Shown: positions 15 to 27,400 of the stretch, one piece after another
Layout: the number at the start of each line of letters is the position of its first letter
How positions within the stretch are numbered: the first letter of the stretch is position 1
DNA from: Perna viridis
Taxonomy: Eukaryota
Direction of reading: 5' to 3'
Assembly: GCA_037379345.1 (NCBI GenBank)
Contig: CM074517.1
Location: 13,702,001 to 13,766,000, forward strand
Length of the DNA: 64,000 bases
Notes under the pieces: generated by a model
Database searches by the model: none
Told to the model about the DNA's origin: nothing
The model's input: the letters and a program-made list of their open reading frames with translations, nothing else
Program-made: the position numbers and the translations under genes

Positions 15-161
15 ATTATTGACAACAAGGAACATGATAGTCTTTGGGACTAAATCTCTCTGTGTTTTGCTGACAATCTTCATGTAAGAGTCCACCAGGT
101 TCCTTATGGTCTCTACTTGTCTCTCTAACTGAGGGTCCATTGAGCCAATATCATCCTTCCC
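15..161 (-). CDS. DNM: Dynamin GED-start exon ([49 protein letters not shown])
   Basis: 147 nt, tttcag acceptor, gtatgt donor, conserved dynamin motif. Confidence 0.95.
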
Positions 162-3457: not shown

Positions 3458-6400
3458 TAGGGAGGCTTATGCTTTCCTTTTAACCTTTTCAGTGCCCCTA
3501 TAAGATGATGAGTGTGCTTTATAAATTGCTCAGTCAAAAAAATTATAAGGGAGGCATTTTTTTTTTTTTTAATTTTACTAATTCATTGATATAGTGATCA
3601 AATGGGTAATGATGCAGTCTCAAAGGAAGGCCTGAGAACCAAGATATCACTTCGAGTTGGCCTAAAGGTGATATTTTATGAATGATTCTAGTCTAAGCTA
3701 ACAAACAACAGTAAAATATAACAGAGAGAATAATGAGGAAACAATCATTTTATACAAATTTGGGCCACAGCTATTCTAGATATTTAACAGCAAAATCAAA
3801 TCAAATTGTTGGTTTCTGTGCATATCTTTCATATGAACTCTTCATGGTAAATAAATAGTAATGTTAACCTGTCTGAACAATTTTTTATCAAATTTTAATT
3901 GATTCTGGTAATGATTTGGTTTTGGATTTTTTTTTTTCAAAGAAATGTTCTAAAAAGTGTCAATTTGTCTGTAAAATCAAGATTTAACAATTTTCATGGT
4001 AACAGTTAAATTCTTCTATAATTTTCATACCACAAAGAAGTTCCTACATCAAACAATAGCAAAATGCATAAAAAATGCAAAAAGCCATTTCAAGAACAGT
4101 GTGCAAATTTTAATGTTAAAATATTCTCATAATGCAGTGCATACACTACCCACAATGCATTACTTACACCAGATTCACGTCCCTCATCCTGTGATCTGTC
4201 TGGGTACACACCAGCCCTGAGAAATGAAGCTTTCCAACTATCTATATCGTCCTGAGACTCTCCTGATAATTCTAACTGTTTGTAGTCCTTGTATACATTT
4301 CTGTAAAGACATTTAATATAAAAAAATCAAAATTAAGAATAATTTCAAAAGAATATAATAACATTTTAATAAATTAATGATAAAATGTTTCATTAATACA
4401 TTGAGTTTCTGTCCATACTATTCAAAGGAATGGAACCTGCTGATACTTTATTATGATAAATCTTTTAATGCTTAATTCATCTCAGCTGTTAAATGTTCAG
4501 GAGGTGTGAAAGTATTTTTCTTGATGTTTCTATCACCTCTTTTTCAGTGTTAAATTCCAATAACTTGAAAATGGATTATCAGAAAACAATATTAAAAATA
4601 AAATATTTAGCAGGGTGCAGCTGGATTTAACCACAATGGTCAAACCCTGATCATTCTGGTTCTTTTTAACTCCTAAATCCTGAAGAGTTAAGAACCTCAA
4701 TGCCATCCCATTATGACCTTTCAGGTATGAAAACATTTGGTCCAACTTTACAGAGATCCATATAATGACTGGTTTACACAAATTATACAGTTACATAAAT
4801 TTGTGTTTTGGACATTCAACAGATCCTATCTGGCACATTATTCCTGAACAATTAAGGCCATATCCCCACCCCTTAAAAATAATTACCCAATATTAATTTG
4901 TGGTATGCAACCTTATTGTAAAACCTCATCAAAATCTATCCACTAATACTCAAGTTATCTCACAAATGCAAGTCGTTTATTTTGAAAACAATACAGACAA
5001 TGATAGTGCCAGGTCTTTATAAAAACCAACAATCATTTCATGATGCAGTAACAAACACTGTATTGATCTATTTTTTTACAACATCAGAAAATTTTGACTG
5101 ATGGAAAGACTAATAAATTGGCAGCAGTATACCATTATACAATGTACCTTTGGAAAAAAATACACATAAAAATAAAACAAAAATTCCATGTACAATTTGA
5201 AGACAAAAAATATGAAAATTGGAAAAGGGAGGAAGACATGGTGTAAAATAGAAATTACATTGGTAAGGGTTGTGTCCATGCATGAAATAGCTTACACTGC
5301 AAGTTATCCTATACTGAAGAGGTATTAGTTTGTAAAAATGAATATTTCCATCACAGTTTTAGTCTAGTATTTAAAAAATGTTACATAATAAACAGAAGTT
5401 ACATAAATTCCAGATAAAGGAATATTTACAATTGTAACAAATCTAAGCCCTATAAAATTAAGCTTTGTGATGAAACATGATAAGTATATCAACCACCAAG
5501 ATTTATAACCTTTGATAATACATCCATCACCAAGAGTTATAACCCTTGATAATGCATCCACCACCAAGAGTAACGACCCTGATACCATGCTTACCTTGAT
5601 TCAGGATTAAATAATGCAAACATGTGTTTATGTGAGAATAGACCTCCCTCCATATCCCTTATCTTTAAACCATCAAGTGGTATCATAAATTTCTTCTCTT
5701 TTTCCTAGAAATTGAACATCTACAGTCATATACATTGTGCAATGATTTTGGGTGATATGAAGGTATCTGTGCCTAAAGTCCAGGTCTGTCAGTGCCATGG
5801 GGAAAATATGGTGTTATCAATGTCAAGGTCATATTGTCAGGGGGTCAAGATTGTTGACTGATGATGTGAAAGGGCAGAAAAAAACACTGAATACTCACAT
5901 TCTCATCATAACAGATTAATGGACTACAAAGCTAAATTTGAAAGTAACTACATCTGATGGACTTGAATGTTAGGTTTTCAGTGTCAATCCAAGCCCTGTG
6001 TTAATAAAGCAATGTGACTAATGCAGACAAAGAACGCAGCATGAGTCCATAGACCCTTGGGTGCCTTTGGGTATAGAGGTCATGACCTAACCTGTTATCA
6101 GCGCTGATGATAGCAAAACCCTTCCTTTTGCTCAGAAATCCAGACTCGCCAGTATCACGTAATCGTAGATTATTATTATCTAATGGTATCATGAACTTCT
6201 TTTCCCTTTCCTAGAAAATGGTGACAAGCAAAACTAAAGACAACAAAACACATTTACAAAGGGTATGACTTCATGCTAAATGGTAATCATGCAAGTTACT
6301 AATAAGTCTCTGTATGGATAAGTTCTAAACTATGTGCATGTAAGAATCAGGCAAATCCTGTGATACACCAGTTATTTGTTGTAGAACTTCTTGTTGCTGA

Positions 6401-9400
6401 AACACGTCCAACGCACTGAGGAACAATCCCTAAAGAATAAGGCAAATCCTGTGATACACGAGTTATTTGTTGTAGAATTTATTGTTGCTGAAACACATTC
6501 AACGCACTGAGAAACAATCCCTATTCCCACTTTTTGCGCTGTATCAGGATAGTGAGGAATGACTGAACTATTTGAAAAGCAGTTGAAATACAATGCAAAA
6601 TTTTTTCAACCATGTTTTTCACACTATAATCATCAAATTTATGTCTCCACCATACTGTCTCAGCAGTACAAAAGTGTTTTCCAGATGAACTGAATGCATT
6701 TCAGAGAAAAAAATGTTCCACAATAGTATCATGTGTATCACCCACGGCCTGATTCTAGTATGGGGACATGTTCTTAATAATTTTATAAATTATTTTATAT
6801 ATTTTATATTTCAAAGCATCATAGCATCCACACTTTTCAATTTTTTGTTCATTAAATTTGAATATAGGTAAGTGCACTAAACTTAGAACTTAAATTCTAA
6901 CATAGCTATTAAGTCAGAAAAACAACAAATGCCATCTATCACTAAAGCATGCATAATTGTCATTTTATTTAATGACAATGTAACAACAAATCATTCTAAT
7001 CTAAATGAAAGCTAAGATAAGAGTATAAGTTGTGGTTATAGAAAGACTAGAAGACAAACCATTAGATAGGTTTGTATTGTGGTGACAACATTGACTTATA
7101 CCTATGTTCAGAGGAGAAAAGGGCAAAAGTTGGACGCTTTGATAACATTTTTTCAACATCTCGGACTTTAACATTCTCCAGAGAGAGCATGTATTTCTTG
7201 TCACTTTCCTGAAAGAAGAGTTTTACAATGCCAATACATTTTTAAACTATTCATTGCATGCAGCTTTACTTGTCCACATTTCATTATATTAACAAAGTAA
7301 GACAAGCTTGTCATGTACTTTATGAATGAACTTAAACTCATAAAAAAATGTGTACATGTACATGTATTTGTAATTTGTACATTACTACTGTTCTTTTGTA
7401 CATAACATTTCCTTACTAAGTATAGTAACCTTTGAAATTAATACATGCTTATATCAAAATCAGCCTTTGGTGGTTGGATAACATGAACACATGCAGCTTT
7501 AGGAAAAGTAACAATGTTTGAAATGCAACAAATACTGAGGATGCTTAATAAAATATTGAGGATTAAAAACATGTTATAAGCATGGAAATGGAGAAAATTA
7601 CAATACTAAAAGACATGGATGCAACTTAAGAAAGACAATCAATACTAGTACTAGCAGTTTCAATGGATAAATTGTTTCTGTTTTATAACAAGATGGTATG
7701 AAAACAAAGATGCAGAGACTACAAGAATGTAGCAGTATATGATTACACTCAATAAGAACAAGACTACAAGTAAACAAGACGCAGATACACTTTAATCACC
7801 ATGAATTTTTAATTTCTCCACTGTATATGATGGAGGGAAATGGTGGCTCAAATATGACTCCACCAAATCTCCACCCAAGATACATGTGTAATAAGGTAAA
7901 TTATTTCAATTTGATATTTTTAAATTATGTTATGTGTTTATAATTGCAATCTTAGTAAACTGTCAGAATTTTTATGTGACTCCCATCAAACTCCATCTCC
8001 ACTGTGTAAAGTGGAGAAAAATAAAACTCATGCCGTCAGAAGTGTAAAATAAGAAAGGGAAAACATATTCTGATATGATGAAAAGGCTTACTCATAATAA
8101 GGTTACAATTCAATATCAGTACAATACATTCGTGTTGTTTTGGTTATCGATAGAGTGCACATAAATGTGTTTAGATCAATATCATTAAATGATTGGGAGT
8201 AAATGCTTATCAAATTAATTGAGTATATTATATTCATAACGTGTAGTTTGTTGATCAAGAAATATAATTAGATGAGTATCTATACTGGTATGTAAATACA
8301 TTCAACATTCTGTCAATGGCAGTTATTATAGGTCATAGGTCAATGTCAAAGTAATACATGTACATCAATTACTGAATAGCTCATTAAATAATTTTCCTTT
8401 TAATAAAAGAGAAGCAATATTTAGAATTGCTAAAATGTGTTCATAAAATACAGATGCATTGTCATTAAAACATATATAAAAAATACATATTGTATTCAAT
8501 AACAATAAATGTGAAAACAGTCATTTTAGCTTAAATCTGCATAAAATATTTGCATTGAAAAGTTATGATATTTTCAATATATATGTAAATAGATTTAGGC
8601 TTAAGAACTTTTTTATGTGTTTACAAAAAGACCCTGTTAATTTATAATTAGTATTCAAATGTAACATAGAAGTTTGAACCCATGTGTGAAAGAATTCTTC
8701 AGCAGAATTAGAACAGTGGGTTCATTCAAGTTTATATTTAAAACTGCCATACTGTTATCATTGACTCAAATGCATGTACCTCACAGTAAATTGTTCCTTA
8801 ACCAAATAATGAATATACCTCTTCATCCTTGAACCAAGACAGGGATTCAGTGGTCAGAACGAACCAGAAATCTTTTGACCCTCCTTTCATAAAACTAATG
8901 TTGTGTAGAGTTAACCAGCCTTTCCTTATCACCTAAAAGTACAGAAAAAATACATTCTTGAATAATAAAATTTCAAAGACTTTATCTTCTAAATAATGAC
9001 AAAGTGATCAAGCAGATACAATACAGCCAGTAAGCTAAACCAAAGCAATACCAGATTCTATGGATTGTCTATATGATATACACTTTCTAATTTTTTTTTT
9101 CTATACACATTGCACTACCATTATCTCTTATGTCAGAAATATGACTAATTGCAGATTAATGGCAATTTATTCACCCTTCAATTCATTATATGTGCGTATT
9201 ATCACATTATGGTATTATCAAAAGGTGAAGCCCTTATGGTAACATCGTGATTAAATAAACAATAGGCACAAGTCTAATGATATAGTTGTGTAACATTCTA
9301 CACGAAATAAAAGGTCTGGGGAAAAAATTAAAACACACTGACTGTAAACTTACATGTGACACTCTGTCATTGACTTAATGTAATTTTTCGATATGACCAA

Positions 9401-12400
9401 AAATTTTATACATGGTTAAGAAGTTACCAATATGTCACCTACTTCAAACCAAAATCATAGTTCACTTTTAATTTTTGACAAATTTACAATAAAAGTAATT
9501 TAATTTTTATCATTCACATAGATGAAAGATCTTTTGAATTTGCTTAAGTTAATTTTAGTTATATAAATGCTAATGCACACACAAATTTTTAAATTTAATA
9601 CATGTATACATTGTTCCATAATTATTCAAGCAATTAGCAAAAATGAAAAATATCTTTACAGGTATGTCAAGTTTAAGCAATGCATGGGAAACTTGGGAAT
9701 ATGGTGACCTTATAAAATTTCTACATTTTGCTTCATTGCATTTAAGAAATAACATATCTGTTCCATTTTTAAATCTGTGAATAAAACCTTTTTAAAACAT
9801 TTCAAATTGCATTTTCATAAACTACAAGCAAAATCCACTGAACTTACCCAAGTCCAATGCCGTATTGAAAAAAAAAGCTTAAAATGCAGACTTGCTACTA
9901 TAGCAACAGGAATGTTAGTTGTATTTAGTTTCTTTTTATTATTATCATGTTTTATTTTTTTTTTGCTGTGTTTTGGTGCCTTGGTATCTCTATACATTTT
10001 TTATCATTACTTAAACTAGACATTCCTGAAGAAAATCAAATATTGTTGAGAAAAAAACATCAAAACATGCATTTTTTTCTCTTAAATAAATATACCACAT
10101 ACTCCTAAAAATTATATGAACTTTATAAATATATTTCAGCATCCTTGTAACTTCCTTGATTATGTATATTTTTTTAACAAAAGATGATTGTGAATAATAG
10201 TAAGTAATATAAAATGTGAAGCAGAGCAAATGACAGCTCTAAGTATTAGTACTGCTGCATGATACTGAAAGATTAGAAGCATAGTACCAAATGTGTATGT
10301 TCAAATATGCATATTTTTTTTTTAATTTTAATACACACGTTGTTTTTCAGAATACAAGCTAAATTGAAAAGGAGACTACCAAAATAAAGGTTGTCAATTA
10401 CACTGTAGATTTAAATAAAATTATGATTACAATTTCACTTAGCGTAGATAGGAAATCACAAAACAATTTGGGATAACTCTTGTAAGGCACAAAGAATTGG
10501 CAAGAGATACTTTTACTACATCAAGTAATAATTGAGTCTTTGTGAATTTAAAAAAAATACAATTTTGTAAGCCCTTAACTCAAAAGCAGTAAAAATGATT
10601 AATTTTCAATTTCAGATGGGACTTCTCTACTATAAATGTCTGATCAAACGAAGGACACTCAGGCACAGGTCTACAATTCACAAGAGGCAAAGATTTCATT
10701 TATTATGCAAATTAGTACCTTAAGCCTGTAAAATACATCAGTTGAGAACTGGGCAATATCATTAAGTTTTAAATTTGTGATGATCAAAGGTGATTTTTTT
10801 TTTTTTAAATTTGAACTGAATATACTGAATGTTTTTGGAAGCTATAACAGTAGAAATCCTGTTCACCTTGAAACAGTACTTCTTTCTTTCTTTCATTTCT
10901 TAAAAGACCAAAAATCAAATGAATATTATCTGCTAGTTTTGATTCACTAAGTTGATAAAGATGGCAAAATAACAGACACAAGAAACTATAAACTATAATA
11001 TTCTATAATAATATAATATGTGCTTCATAGGTTTTTATACCACAGCCATGGTAAAACTTTGATAAACAAATATGACCAGCATTATAGATGCATGATAGCT
11101 TTATTTCCAACATCATAAATAAGTTTAACACAATTTTACTGACATCACAACAGAATTTTGGTCCAAAATGGTTGCCATTTATTGCAACAAACAGGCTGCG
11201 TCTTTTAAAAAATATGAAGAAGTAAGTCCTATTAGAATCAAAATAAATTAAGGAAACTTCACTTAATCATTATTTTACCATAGGCTGGACATTTATGTTG
11301 ATATTGAACCCTTGGTTACCGCTCAGGATAAAATAATGGGATATAAATGGCCAGCTCATGGTAAAACAATGATAAAATGGAGTATCTGTGATTTATTTCT
11401 TAAATTAGGGATATTGCCACATTAACAACCAGTGTATATTACTACATAGCTATAGACCAATATAAACTTAACTTACTTGGTCTTTTACAGTTTCTTTATA
11501 ACCCTATTATTATCATTGAAAGATGAAATCAAATTTGTTATAAAATTTCAAGAAGACAAATGGAGAATTAAAATGTTTGTCATGTTAATTCATTTCAAGG
11601 TCTACACCAGAAAAATGTCCATACTAGCAATTATAGTTATGTTAGTGTAGAATCTTGTTAATTTGGAGGCGACATTGTGACAGGTATTGAGGGGTTTTAG
11701 TGGACAACCATGAACATGGAATTTTACATTCTTTTTTTAATGAACAAGATGTTATTTCAGTGGAAAGAAAAAAAAGTTTTATTTTTGTTGAGTTAAATTT
11801 ACATGTAAATCTGAAAGACCATCCATGTAGCTTGACCTTCTGAAAGAAAACTATAATGATAATTATATAAAAGTTACTTCAACAAATTTAATTTTGACAA
11901 CTCAAGAGACAGTGACAATAAACCTGAAAGACTGTGACCAAAACTCACCTGATAATATCCCCACTCCCCTCAACAGAAATCATAAAAGAAACCATAAGAG
12001 TCATTCAGATGGAATATCAAAGTATAGGAGTTCAAAATGGCATCATAAGATGATGAACTTGTAAAAGTTACATCAACTTCCATTCAGCTATTTTAGAGGA
12101 ATTGCAGATGGAAACTGGGGACAAGCGGACAGATGAGCACTGCTTTTGCGTAATATTATAAAACACAGCTGTCTATACCTGTTCGTGTTCTTTGGTCCTT
12201 AACTATTCACCTAAATCATGTTTGTATGGAATTTTTAAGTAGCATCAGACAGAAGATAATTCATGCATGTAAAAAACCCAATTCAGTTTTATTCCTAGTT
12301 CAGAAACAGTTACAGACCACAGAACCAGTCTTAGCTTGTCGTTCAGTTACAGACCACAGAACCAGTCTTAGCTTGTCACTCTGTTACAGACCACAGAACC

Positions 12401-24400: not shown

Positions 24401-27400
24401 GCATGAAGATATTAAAAAGCAACACATCTGCAAGGCTCACCTAACCCCCAATACACTCTTTATTGTGTATAAAATCTCACGACGGATTTCTCGCTCACAT
24501 ATACCATCTGATTGGTACACCTGTAATACAAAGGTTAACAGTCAATACAGGTACCCGGTCACTCACCTAATAGCATGAATATTCTTGATTATTATACCAA
24601 TTTCTCGTCGTAATTCTCGCTCATCAAACTCCATCTACAAGATAAAATCTACTTATTACAACAAACCTAAATGAAAAATAATAAATGCCAACCCGCCAGC
24701 TTTCACTCCAAAATGTGATAATAATCAGAAAACTATTTTGTATCTTTTACAAGCAAGGAAAAAGCAAGGAACTATTTATACTGTAGCCCACACGAAACAA
24801 ATGAAATGACATCTGACGAAGCTGGAATATTTACAACCACTATGAAAGGCATCGCTACTGCTGACAAACTCCATCCCCCTTACCATTCAGTCACTCAGAA
24901 TATACAATATAAAAATGTTATCAACCTGGAAACCCTTGCTTAGCTGTACTTGTTAAATTTTGGTAAAAAATCACACACGCCCACACACACACACAGACCC
25001 TTTGTATGTGCTGCATACTAAGGAACAATGAATTCATTTCTGCTTTATACAATACCTTGACTAGTTCAAAGGGAAATCGTTCATGAAAAATTCTATTAAT
25101 TTTTGCTCCTCCACTGAGTTCTAGGGCACTAATCTCAGCACCTGAACCTTCTATAGACTTCTCAAAATCTCCACCAAACTGTGTACACATCCTAAAAAAT
25201 AAACAAGTTAAATTTTTTTGTAGTGTATAGAAATGCTATAAAACCACAGTTAAGGGCCAGAAACCAATCACTTTCTATCTCAGTATCCCAAGCCAAATCT
25301 AATGACTGTCTGGATCTGATTTTTACTTATGATAACTGCATTGTAACATAAGCCAGATATAGAAGATTCACAGGATACCACAATGGAAACAGATCACAAA
25401 TTGAAACAAAATCTATTTTTAAACAATAACAAAGATATACTGGTGGACATTTGTAAAAATACTATTTAAGTTTTTAAATTAGCTACCAAAATTTCTTTTG
25501 AAGCAGAATGACATTCAAGTACACAATACAATATTACATACTGCATCATGGCTTTAGTCTTTCTGGCTGGATCATCAGGTCTGAAGTTTTTGAATTCTTC
25601 CACATCTTTCTCCATGCCTAACAGCTGAGATTGTAACTTATTTCTGAGGGCAGGTAAAGTGTCTTTTATATGATTGGTCAGTTGTTGGTTTAAGACTCTC
25701 TGTAGATGTGGTGTACCCATTCTGTCTGCCATGTGCCTATATATCATCAAAAATTCAAAGTAGTGTTTTATTACTAACATTAATTACAGGAAAACGATAA
25801 TGTAGCTTGAGCTTGTTGTGAGGGCTTACATTATTGTTTTTCTGTAATTAGTGTTGATAATAAAAACACTACTTTGAATTTATTATTAACATTAAGTACA
25901 GGAAAACAATAAGTACAAAAAAAACAATAATGAAGTTTGAACTTGTTGTGAGGGCTTACATTAACTTTTTGATGTTATATGCAGTACAAATTTTCATGAA
26001 ACATCAGACATAAGCAAATTAATATAATAAGTATTGTTTGATATCTAATGTAATATTAACTAATTACCTTCAATATTGAAATACATGTACAGACAAGTAT
26101 TACTTCTGAACTCATGTAATATATATATCTAACTATTTTACATGTACTCTATCCTATCCACTTAATTAATGCATAAAATTGTATATCTTTACTGTTTTAG
26201 TTTTCAACAATATACCTGTATGAGGGATGACTGAGAAAGAATTTACGTTCAGCAGCCAATGCAGCTCTGATGTCTTTTCTTCCTTCAATATCTTTCTGAC
26301 TTCTGTTGACTACACCAATATAACCTAAAACAATAAAATCAATTTGATCATATTCTATTGATACATAGTATCTAAAATTCATACTTTGTACTCTTAACTG
26401 TCTTTTTTAATGTGTGAAAGCTTCATTAATCTGTTCATATGCATGTCCCCATCTTTTACACAAAAACTGGAAGCATCATATCTATGATAAATTTATATGC
26501 TTAAATACTGGATACTAATGGAGGTTTTATTTTGATTAAAAAAACAAAATTTGTGAGACAGACAGACAGACAGGACAAGTAGGTTATCATCAACCTCTAT
26601 GGCAAAATGTTTTCAAAAACGCCTTTGATGGCAAAATGTTTAAAAACTCCAAAACTACATTTTGGGTTTGCTGAAAATTGAACACAATCAATATTTTATT
26701 GTATTAAACAACTGTTCAAAGTTTCAAAGTTTTCACAATTTATTGATCCCTTCTGGCTTCACAAGTTATTATCTGGACACTGTCAGAGAGAGTAATTAAA
26801 GGAACCAATGTTATAGCGGTAATCAAAAGAATGCAATCCAGGGACAAAGACCAGACATCAGGGGATGAACAGACACACAACTTATCATAAAGTATCACAT
26901 AATACTTGGCCACTCCTTGTGGTGGAATATAAAGTATCACATAATAATTGGCCACTGCTTGTGGAGGAATATAAAGTATCACATAATACTTGGCCACTCC
27001 TTGTGGTGGAATATAAAGTATCACATAATACTTGGCCACTGCTTGTGGTGGAATATAAAGTATCACATAATAATTGGCCACTGCTTGTGGTGGAATATAA
27101 AGTATCATATAATAATTGGCCACTGCTTATGGTGGAATATAAAGTATCACATAATAATTGGCCACTCTTGTGGCGGAGTCAATATTCTGCAAAATACATC
27201 ATCTCAAATATAGCAAATACTCCACAGCAATCAAAATCTCCTTCAACAATGATAACTATACCTAACTAAGAGTAGATCCCTACCTCTCCTGAGTGGTAAT
27301 GTTCTGTTTTCTAACACTTCTCTAGCATCTGTTCCTTCATCCATTAAATCTAGTTTGGTCACTACACCCATTGTTCTTACACCTAAACAATATTAAAACA

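What the first reader, a model, noticed from the sequence alone, without database searches (positions are those of the whole stretch)
5595..7208. Three tandem, apparently mutually exclusive exons rewrite the membrane-facing half of the dynamin PH domain
Seen in sequence: between the constitutive PH exons 8932-8819 and 4300-4168 lie three homologous exons, A (107 nt), B (119 nt) and C (110 nt). All are open, have GT-AG boundaries and are phase 0-2. Only one-of-three keeps frame; zero, any two (217/226/229 nt) or all three (336 nt) frameshift. Established knowledge: this exon matches human DNM1 about 558-594 (EKEKKY..GFMSSK..FNTEQR), covering K562, the beta5-beta6 hydrophobic loop (VL4) and the start of VL3, which contact phosphoinositide membranes. 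The variants differ mostly at that loop: EKMLSKR (A), [11 protein letters not shown] (B), EGGLFSHKH (C). Inference: one gene may produce lipid- or curvature-tuned fission isoforms by exon switching, where vertebrates use paralogues. The vertebrate mutually exclusive pair I know of is stalk exon 10a/b, not a PH exon. C has the strongest donor (gtaagc) and is the likely default. I cannot check whether this cluster is already annotated.
Basis: partly seen in the sequence, partly recalled or inferred. Interest (0 to 1): 0.88.

Follow-up and report, generated by a model that had tools for sequence, protein, structure and literature searches.

The report
Swappable dynamin PH-domain exon triplet
The only classical dynamin gene of this invertebrate genome carries three alternative versions of one exon for the membrane-touching part of its PH domain. 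RNA shows two of them used one at a time and the acceptor of the third in use, and a related species keeps all three intact.

Summary
On the minus strand, three homologous exons lie between PH exons 8932-8819 and 4300-4168: A (7208-7102, 107 nt), B (6210-6092, 119 nt) and C (5704-5595, 110 nt). All are open, AG/GT-bounded and 3n+2 long.

They are the only copies in the 723-Mb genome, which has one classical dynamin gene.

RNA contigs from four studies show:
- C is joined to both constitutive exons in all four runs.
- B is joined to both in one run, at a higher contig depth than C there.
- For A, only the acceptor joint appears (one low-depth contig that runs on into the next intron).

No double inclusion or skipping was seen. 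Either would hit a stop codon within 6-21 codons.

A second species keeps A, B and C in the same order, with intact splice sites and unalignable introns. dN/dS is about 0.17, 0.19 and 0.03.

Two further unrelated contigs carry tandem pairs of the same exon.

The exon corresponds to human dynamin-1 residues 558-594. The variants differ most at the VL4 loop, which is conserved within each type.

I found no paper describing this. It is a new member of a known kind, a mutually exclusive exon cluster. Any difference in membrane behaviour is inferred, not shown.

The parts
8819..8932 (-). Constitutive PH-domain exon (114 nt, ends in phase 0). It encodes the first PH strands and VL1, and is the equivalent of human VIRKGW...KDDEE.
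   Evidence: Sequence. Weak Pfam PH hit, E 0.0022. Joined in RNA contigs to C, B or A.
7102..7208 (-). Variable exon A (107 nt). Its loop reads E-K-M-L-S-K-R-P, one residue shorter than C and without the aromatic residue.
   Evidence: Acceptor joint 8819>7208 in run X1 only, depth 6.6, in a contig that continues into intron 7101-6308. The orthologue in L001 is 83% identical, 107 nt, with the same splice sites and dN/dS about 0.17.
6092..6210 (-). Variable exon B (119 nt). It has a longer, more basic loop ([11 protein letters not shown]) and two extra Asn residues.
   Evidence: One 173-nt contig in run X10 joins 8819>6210 and 6092>4300, at depth 51.8 against 27.7 for C. The orthologue in L001 is 113 nt and 54% identical, with dN/dS about 0.19.
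5595..5704 (-). Variable exon C (110 nt). It is the common form and the closest to canonical dynamin (loop E-G-G-L-F-S-H-K).
   Evidence: Joined on both sides in all four runs, at depths 174, 72, 64 and 28. It matches dynamin-1/2/3 PH structures with E down to 1e-11, at residues 558-592. The orthologue in L001 is 94% identical with dN/dS about 0.03.
4168..4300 (-). Constitutive PH-domain exon (133 nt, enters in phase 2). It encodes the rest of VL3 and the C-terminal helix ([10 protein letters not shown]...[12 protein letters not shown]).
   Evidence: Sequence. Joined to C and to B in RNA contigs.
7080..7101 (-). Conserved intron flank just after the exon A donor (GTAT.A.TCAATGTTGT). It is a candidate splicing-control element.
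   Evidence: 16 of the first 18 intron bases match between the window and L001, while the rest of the intron does not align.
6070..6091 (-). Conserved intron flank just after the exon B donor (GTTAGGTCAT...). It keeps a weak donor and is a candidate control element.
   Evidence: The first 10 bases are identical and similarity continues to about base 22 in L001.

Best explanation
This is a real cluster of three mutually exclusive exons, made by tandem exon duplication, in the single classical dynamin gene of this genome. Each mRNA takes one of A, B or C between the two constitutive PH-domain exons.

The chosen exon encodes the equivalent of human dynamin-1 residues 558-594. That span covers the conserved Lys-Lys pair (K561/K562), strands beta4 to beta6, the membrane-dipping VL4 loop and the first residues of VL3.

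Exclusivity at the protein level comes from the reading frame. Every exon is 3n+2 long, so zero, two or three exons give an early stop codon. Such transcripts would be removed by nonsense-mediated decay, which is inferred.

The choice among the three is probably set by weak, conserved donors and short conserved intron flanks read by tissue-specific splicing factors. This too is inferred. C is the default, B is a regulated alternative that has the higher contig depth in some samples, and A is a rare or tissue-restricted form.

The likely consequence is three dynamins that differ in how the PH domain sits on and senses the membrane. VL4 differs in length, hydrophobic tip and charge between types and is conserved within each type.
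For: Anatomy: exact AG/GT borders, open frames and 3n+2 lengths. These are the only three copies in the window and in the genome. There is one classical dynamin gene, plus a Drp1-like gene on another contig.

RNA:
- Contigs from four studies carry joints with GT..AG ends at the predicted bases.
- C is joined on both sides in 4 of 4 runs.
- B is joined on both sides within one 173-nt contig in X10.
- The A acceptor joint appears in X1.
- No A-B, B-C or A-C joints and no skipping joint are listed.
- The genome has no retrocopy that could mimic these joints.

Frame: out-of-frame reading stops after 6, 6, 20 and 8 codons.

Conservation:
- Contigs L001-L003 from another species hold A', B' and C' in the same order, at 107, 113 and 110 nt, all AG/GT.
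- Only the exons plus about 10-20 flanking bases align at the DNA level.
- dN/dS is about 0.17 (A), 0.19 (B) and 0.03 (C).
- A-A', B-B' and C-C' pair in a tree with support 100/97, 88/88 and 100/99. The triplication therefore predates that species split.
- The loop is nearly unchanged within each type and different between types.

Function of the region: the exon aligns to dynamin-1 558-592. VL4 is 576-EKGFMSSK-583. F579A and the disease mutation M580T make binding curvature-sensitive and impair fission (PMC10089193).
Against: - The A donor to 4300 joint was not seen. The one A contig is shallow (depth 6.6) and reads on into the intron.
- All runs are Logan contigs whose RNA label is a guess. 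Contigs drop rare forms and give no reliable quantities, and tissues are unknown.
- B was seen in only one of four runs.
- dN/dS rests on 35-37 codons per exon, with dS near saturation for B and C.
- No conserved docking or selector RNA pairing was found, so the choice mechanism is open.
- No functional difference between the isoforms has been measured.
Confidence: 0.8

Rival explanations
1. Only B and C form a working mutually exclusive pair. A is a leftover duplicate whose acceptor is used now and then, giving unproductive transcripts.
For: A was seen in one run only, at depth 6.6 against 174 for C. The contig does not splice at the A donor but runs about 800 nt into the intron. A has a weak donor, gtataa.
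Against: A is open and 107 nt long in both species, with AG/GT kept. It is 83% identical at the protein level although the introns have diverged beyond alignment. dN/dS is about 0.17 and the loop is the same except for one K/R change. 16 of the first 18 intron bases after its donor are conserved. A dead exon would not keep all of this.
Confidence: 0.15
2. All three exons are spliced one at a time, but the isoforms are functionally equivalent. The cluster persists through neutral partitioning of expression among duplicated exons.
For: No functional data exist. Residues known to bind lipid head groups (the K-K pair) are invariant in all three. Mutually exclusive pairs seem common in this genome, according to unchecked notes on netrin and dynein genes.
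Against: Each type keeps its own loop sequence across species while the types differ from each other exactly there. That pattern indicates type-specific selection. In mammalian dynamin, small changes in this loop have large effects (PMC10089193).
Confidence: 0.2
3. The spliced joints do not come from RNA of this gene. They come from processed copies in DNA or from another organism in the runs.
For: The runs are labelled RNA only by guess, and they also cover introns at low depth.
Against: The genome holds no further copy of the exon. The contigs are at least 99% identical to the window. Exon depth is 10-40 times intron depth. The joints have GT..AG ends at the predicted bases in four separate studies.
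Confidence: 0.02

Closest known systems
Vertebrate DNM1/DNM2 exon 10a/10b (mutually exclusive stalk exons; Boumil et al. 2010, PMC2916854)
   Same: Tandem duplicated exons in a classical dynamin gene, used one at a time, conserved across species and regulated in expression.
   Different: Those exons encode part of the middle (stalk) domain and come as a pair. Here the cluster has three members and encodes the membrane-facing part of the PH domain. That paper states that invertebrate dynamin lacks the stalk pair and has only one isoform there.
Vertebrate dynamin paralogues Dyn1, Dyn2 and Dyn3
   Same: They provide dynamins with different PH-domain membrane properties in different tissues. From my own knowledge, differences in curvature generation between Dyn1 and Dyn2 have been mapped to the PH domain.
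   Different: There the diversity comes from gene duplication. Here one gene swaps 36-40 residues by splicing. That the two serve the same purpose is an inference.
Classic invertebrate mutually exclusive exon clusters (Dscam1, myosin heavy chain, 14-3-3 zeta)
   Same: Arrays of homologous exons from tandem duplication, with one chosen per transcript.
   Different: Several of those use conserved docking and selector RNA pairings. I found no such pairing here. Frame incompatibility plus decay is the only enforcement I can show.
VL4 loop mutants of mammalian dynamin (F579A, M580T; PMC10089193, PMC8351549)
   Same: They change the same loop (576-583) that differs most between A, B and C. Exon A lacks the aromatic tip residue, rather like a natural F579 variant.
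   Different: Those are laboratory or disease point mutations that impair function. Here whole-loop variants are kept by selection as normal isoforms.

Membership tests
Mutually exclusive exon cluster from tandem exon duplication | Adjacent homologous exons of similar length between the same two constitutive exons | tested here: met
   Three copies of 107, 119 and 110 nt, 38-46% identical by tblastn, with no others in the window or genome.
Mutually exclusive exon cluster from tandem exon duplication | Each exon has working splice sites and the same phase | tested here: met
   AG/GT at all six borders, and all enter in phase 0 and leave in phase 2. RNA joints use the acceptors of A, B and C and the donors of B and C.
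Mutually exclusive exon cluster from tandem exon duplication | Transcripts carry exactly one member | tested here: inconclusive
   Met for B and C: single contigs join upstream exon, B or C, and downstream exon, and no double-inclusion or skipping joints are listed. For A only the acceptor joint was seen. Contigs can miss rare forms.
Mutually exclusive exon cluster from tandem exon duplication | Other combinations are non-productive | tested here: met
   Out-of-frame reading stops within 6-21 codons. Removal by nonsense-mediated decay is inferred.
Classical dynamin (GTPase-stalk-PH-GED-PRD) | PH domain matching solved dynamin PH domains | tested here: met
   Exon C matches dynamin-2, -1 and -3 chains with E from 1e-11 to 5e-8, at residues 558-592. 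The upstream exon gives a weak Pfam PH hit below the cut-off. The flanking exons read as the conserved dynamin PH sequence.
Classical dynamin (GTPase-stalk-PH-GED-PRD) | Dynamin middle domain in the same gene | tested here: met
   Pfam Dynamin_M matches exon by exon on the same strand, at window positions about 14372-14955 and 25053-26331.
Classical dynamin (GTPase-stalk-PH-GED-PRD) | GTPase domain, GED and proline-rich tail in the same transcript | not tested
I did not map these exons.

The most novel reading that the evidence does not exclude
The A/B/C split may be an old invertebrate device, shared by several lineages, that lets one dynamin gene make fission machines tuned to different membrane curvature or lipid charge by swapping the VL4 loop. 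That would do by splicing what vertebrates do with Dyn1, Dyn2 and Dyn3.

Hints:
- Two unrelated contigs (L004, L005) carry tandem pairs of this exon.
- Their first copies share the S-R-H-P-x-FALF signature with exon A.
- Their second copies share G-F-A-I with exon B.

The 36-residue tree cannot resolve these deep links.
Probability: 0.35. Interest if true: 0.75.

Novelty: new member of a known kind. Interest (0 to 1): 0.58.

Why it matters
The VL4 loop of the dynamin PH domain was recognised only in 2021-2023 as a second membrane anchor. Small changes in it alter curvature sensing and fission, and one such change causes a human neuropathy.

Here nature supplies three selected versions of that loop and its neighbouring strands in an otherwise identical protein. 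That is a ready-made set of variants for asking how PH-domain geometry, charge and hydrophobicity set the fission properties of dynamin.

It also corrects the published view that invertebrate dynamin comes in one form. And it shows a second evolutionary route to dynamin diversity: exon duplication rather than gene duplication.

Tried and rejected
- Fourth copy: none in the window or the genome.
- Word-index protein searches with the open frames around B and A found nothing. The index needs three shared 5-residue words. These blanks say nothing about absence.
- A search with the downstream exon, meant to catch spliced fragments joining A to it, returned mostly genomic exon fragments and no A-type junction.
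- The profile search of cluster representatives was dominated by the canonical exon type. Only the best 150 of 406 hits could be read.
- Cluster look-up gave no names or taxa.
- Two contigs could not be fetched because the files were too large.
- Docking/selector RNA pairing: the inverted repeats in 4300-8819 are short, AT-rich and not tied to conserved flanks, so I rejected this as unsupported. Steric exclusion is also rejected, because the introns are 891 and 387 nt long.
- The 91-nt and 34-nt tandem repeats in the introns are not conserved in L001.
So there was no full-length protein search, no structure prediction of the three PH variants and no complex prediction.
- Some database hits look like vertebrate, possibly human, dynamin fragments. 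I did not pursue, save or compare them further.
I re-ran it from references.
Full report
**Observation**

The gene runs on the minus strand. Reading the sequence gives these exons:
- a constitutive exon 8932-8819 (114 nt; V-I-R-K-G-W ... S-W-F-K-D-E-E)
- variable exon A 7208-7102 (107 nt)
- variable exon B 6210-6092 (119 nt)
- variable exon C 5704-5595 (110 nt)
- a constitutive exon 4300-4168 (133 nt; [10 protein letters not shown] ... [12 protein letters not shown])

Every border is AG|exon|GT. A, B and C translate without stops and align over their whole length. They are 38-46% identical to each other by tblastn.

tblastn of each exon against the window finds only the other two, with E from 1e-6 to 3e-3, and nothing else above noise. 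A profile of the three, run over the whole 723-Mb assembly, finds only these three places. The genome has one classical dynamin gene, this one. Pfam Dynamin_M matches it exon by exon, and matches a second, Drp1-like gene on another contig.

**Frame logic**

All three exons are 3n+2 long, enter in phase 0 and leave in phase 2.
- A second variable exon after a first is read one base out of frame. It stops after six codons, in B and in C alike.
- With none or all three, the downstream exon is read from its first base and stops after 20 codons.
- After two exons it stops after 8 codons.

Only one-of-three gives a dynamin. I worked this out by reference, exon by exon.

**RNA evidence**

One search for runs listed about twenty runs of the same organism. 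Those with 60-105 Mb of contigs behave like RNA-seq: exon depth is 10-40 times intron depth. I laid four of them, from four studies, on 4100-9000.

| Exon | Joints seen | Runs and depth |
|---|---|---|
| C | 8819>5704 and 5595>4300 | All four runs; depths 174, 72, 64, 28. In X8 one 1294-nt contig carries upstream exon, C and downstream exon. |
| B | 8819>6210 and 6092>4300 | X10 only; one 173-nt contig at depth 51.8, against 27.7 for the C contig in that run. |
| A | 8819>7208 only | X1 only; one 928-nt contig at depth 6.6 that continues past the A donor to 6308. |

All joints have GT..AG ends on the gene strand, at exactly the predicted bases. No joint between two variable exons and no skipping joint is listed. 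The genome has no other copy of the exon, so these joined forms cannot come from a retrocopy.

Limits:
- These are assembled contigs. Rare forms are lost and depths are crude.
- The tissues are unknown to me.
- The RNA label of the runs is a guess.

**Conservation**

A profile search of 1.8 billion cluster representatives returned mainly the canonical exon type from many animals. One hit, P0060, is an A-type exon inside intron-like flanks.

Its contigs are L001-L003, from three runs of another organism. They hold A', B' and C' in the same order. The three are 107, 113 and 110 nt long, each with AG and GT.

At the DNA level only the exons and 10-20 flanking bases align with the window. The two species are therefore far enough apart for introns to have randomised.

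| Exon pair | Protein identity | dN/dS (Nei-Gojobori) |
|---|---|---|
| A-A' | 83% | about 0.17 |
| B-B' | 54% | about 0.19 |
| C-C' | 94% | about 0.03 |

Each estimate rests on 35-37 codons, and dS is near saturation for B and C.

In a tree of exon peptides, A-A', B-B' and C-C' pair with support 100/97, 88/88 and 100/99. Deeper forks are unresolved.

Short intron stretches just after the A and B donors are conserved, including the weak donors gtat.a and gttagg.

Two further, unrelated contigs each carry a tandem pair of the same exon. They are L004, from an ocean metagenome, and L005, from another run. All four exons there are AG/GT and 3n+2. A third contig, L006, has a single copy followed by the downstream exon.

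In the joint alignment:
- the first copies of L004 and L005 share Ser-Arg-His-Pro-x-Phe-Ala-Leu-Phe with exon A (Lys-Arg-Pro)
- the second copies share Gly-Phe-Ala-Ile with exon B

This hints that the types are older than these lineages. It is no proof.

**What the exon encodes**

Exon C aligns to residues 558-592 of full-length human dynamin-1 chains and to the PH-domain structures of dynamin-1, -2 and -3. In the published nomenclature (PMC10089193):
- VL2 is 554-KDDEEKE.
- VL4 is 576-EKGFMSSK, between strands beta5 and beta6.
- VL3 is 590-NTEQRNVYKDY.

The variable exon therefore supplies the end of VL2, the invariant Lys-Lys pair (561/562), beta4 to beta6, all of VL4 and the first five residues of VL3.

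At VL4 the three read as follows:

| Exon | VL4 loop | Features | Net loop charge |
|---|---|---|---|
| C | E-G-G-L-F-S-H-K | Close to the canonical loop | About 0, plus two His |
| B | [11 protein letters not shown] | One residue longer, more basic | About +2 |
| A | E-K-M-L-S-K-R | One residue shorter, no aromatic tip | About +2 |

Within each type the loop is almost unchanged between the two species. The same paper shows that lowering VL4 hydrophobicity (F579A, or M580T of Charcot-Marie-Tooth disease) makes dynamin binding more curvature-dependent and impairs fission and endocytosis. That the three isoforms differ in membrane behaviour is thus a well-grounded inference, but it is untested.

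**How the choice is made**

- Steric exclusion is ruled out, because the introns are 891 and 387 nt long.
- All sites are ordinary GT-AG.
- I found no conserved long-range RNA pairing.
- What remains is frame incompatibility plus decay for enforcement.
- For selection, what remains is weak conserved donors (A, B) against a strong one (C, gtaagc), together with conserved donor-flank elements. This part is inferred.

**Comparison and novelty**

The closest known case is the vertebrate DNM1/DNM2 exon 10a/10b pair in the stalk. The paper on it says that invertebrates have one isoform there (PMC2916854). Drosophila shibire variants are described at the C-terminal tail.

Six full-text searches found no paper on alternative PH-domain exons in any dynamin. 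Automated gene models of related genomes may well contain these isoforms. I could not check that.

Mutually exclusive clusters are a familiar kind, and unchecked notes of this scan report others in the same genome. One of those notes calls the animal a mussel, which I did not test. I therefore class this as a new member of a known kind. Its special interest lies in the part of the protein it rewrites.

**Verdict**

| Claim | Status |
|---|---|
| Observation | Confirmed |
| Interpretation for B and C | Supported |
| Interpretation for A | Probable |
| Functional claim | Plausible but open |

Noticed in passing
window 11477-11503 (minus strand), with exon 13854-13902: A 27-nt in-frame cassette microexon (9 codons, AG/GT) lies in the linker just before the PH domain. 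Loose ends at 8932 show it included in run X8 and skipped (13854 joined to 8932) in X4 and X10. From memory, vertebrate DNM2 has a small optional insert at about the same spot.
   Followed up: partly
window 24441-24634 (minus strand): Two similar stalk exons are separated by a 46-nt intron. This is the subject of another first-reader note (s1-763683). If they are used alternately, it would contradict the published statement that invertebrate dynamin lacks a stalk exon pair. I only read the sequence.
   Followed up: no
L004:143-252 and 2159-2271; L005:990-1099 and 1974-2083: Tandem pairs of the same PH exon occur in two unrelated public contigs of unknown taxa. All four exons are AG/GT and 3n+2 long. 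The first copies resemble exon A (Pro after the basic pair) and the second copies resemble exon B (Gly-Phe-Ala-Ile).
   Followed up: partly
window 6342-6523 and 5485-5590: A 91-nt repeat (2 copies, 92% alike) sits in the A-B intron. A 34-nt repeat (3 copies) starts about 5-20 bases after the exon C donor. Neither is present in the related species' contig, so they are probably neutral.
   Followed up: partly
window 4222: All four runs read G where the assembly has A. On the gene strand this is a synonymous TTT>TTC change in the downstream PH exon. It is probably a variant of the sequenced individual.
   Followed up: no
window 141-155: The exon that follows 4168 in the RNA contigs begins near window position 155 and runs downward, so the gene continues to or beyond the start of the window.
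   Followed up: no
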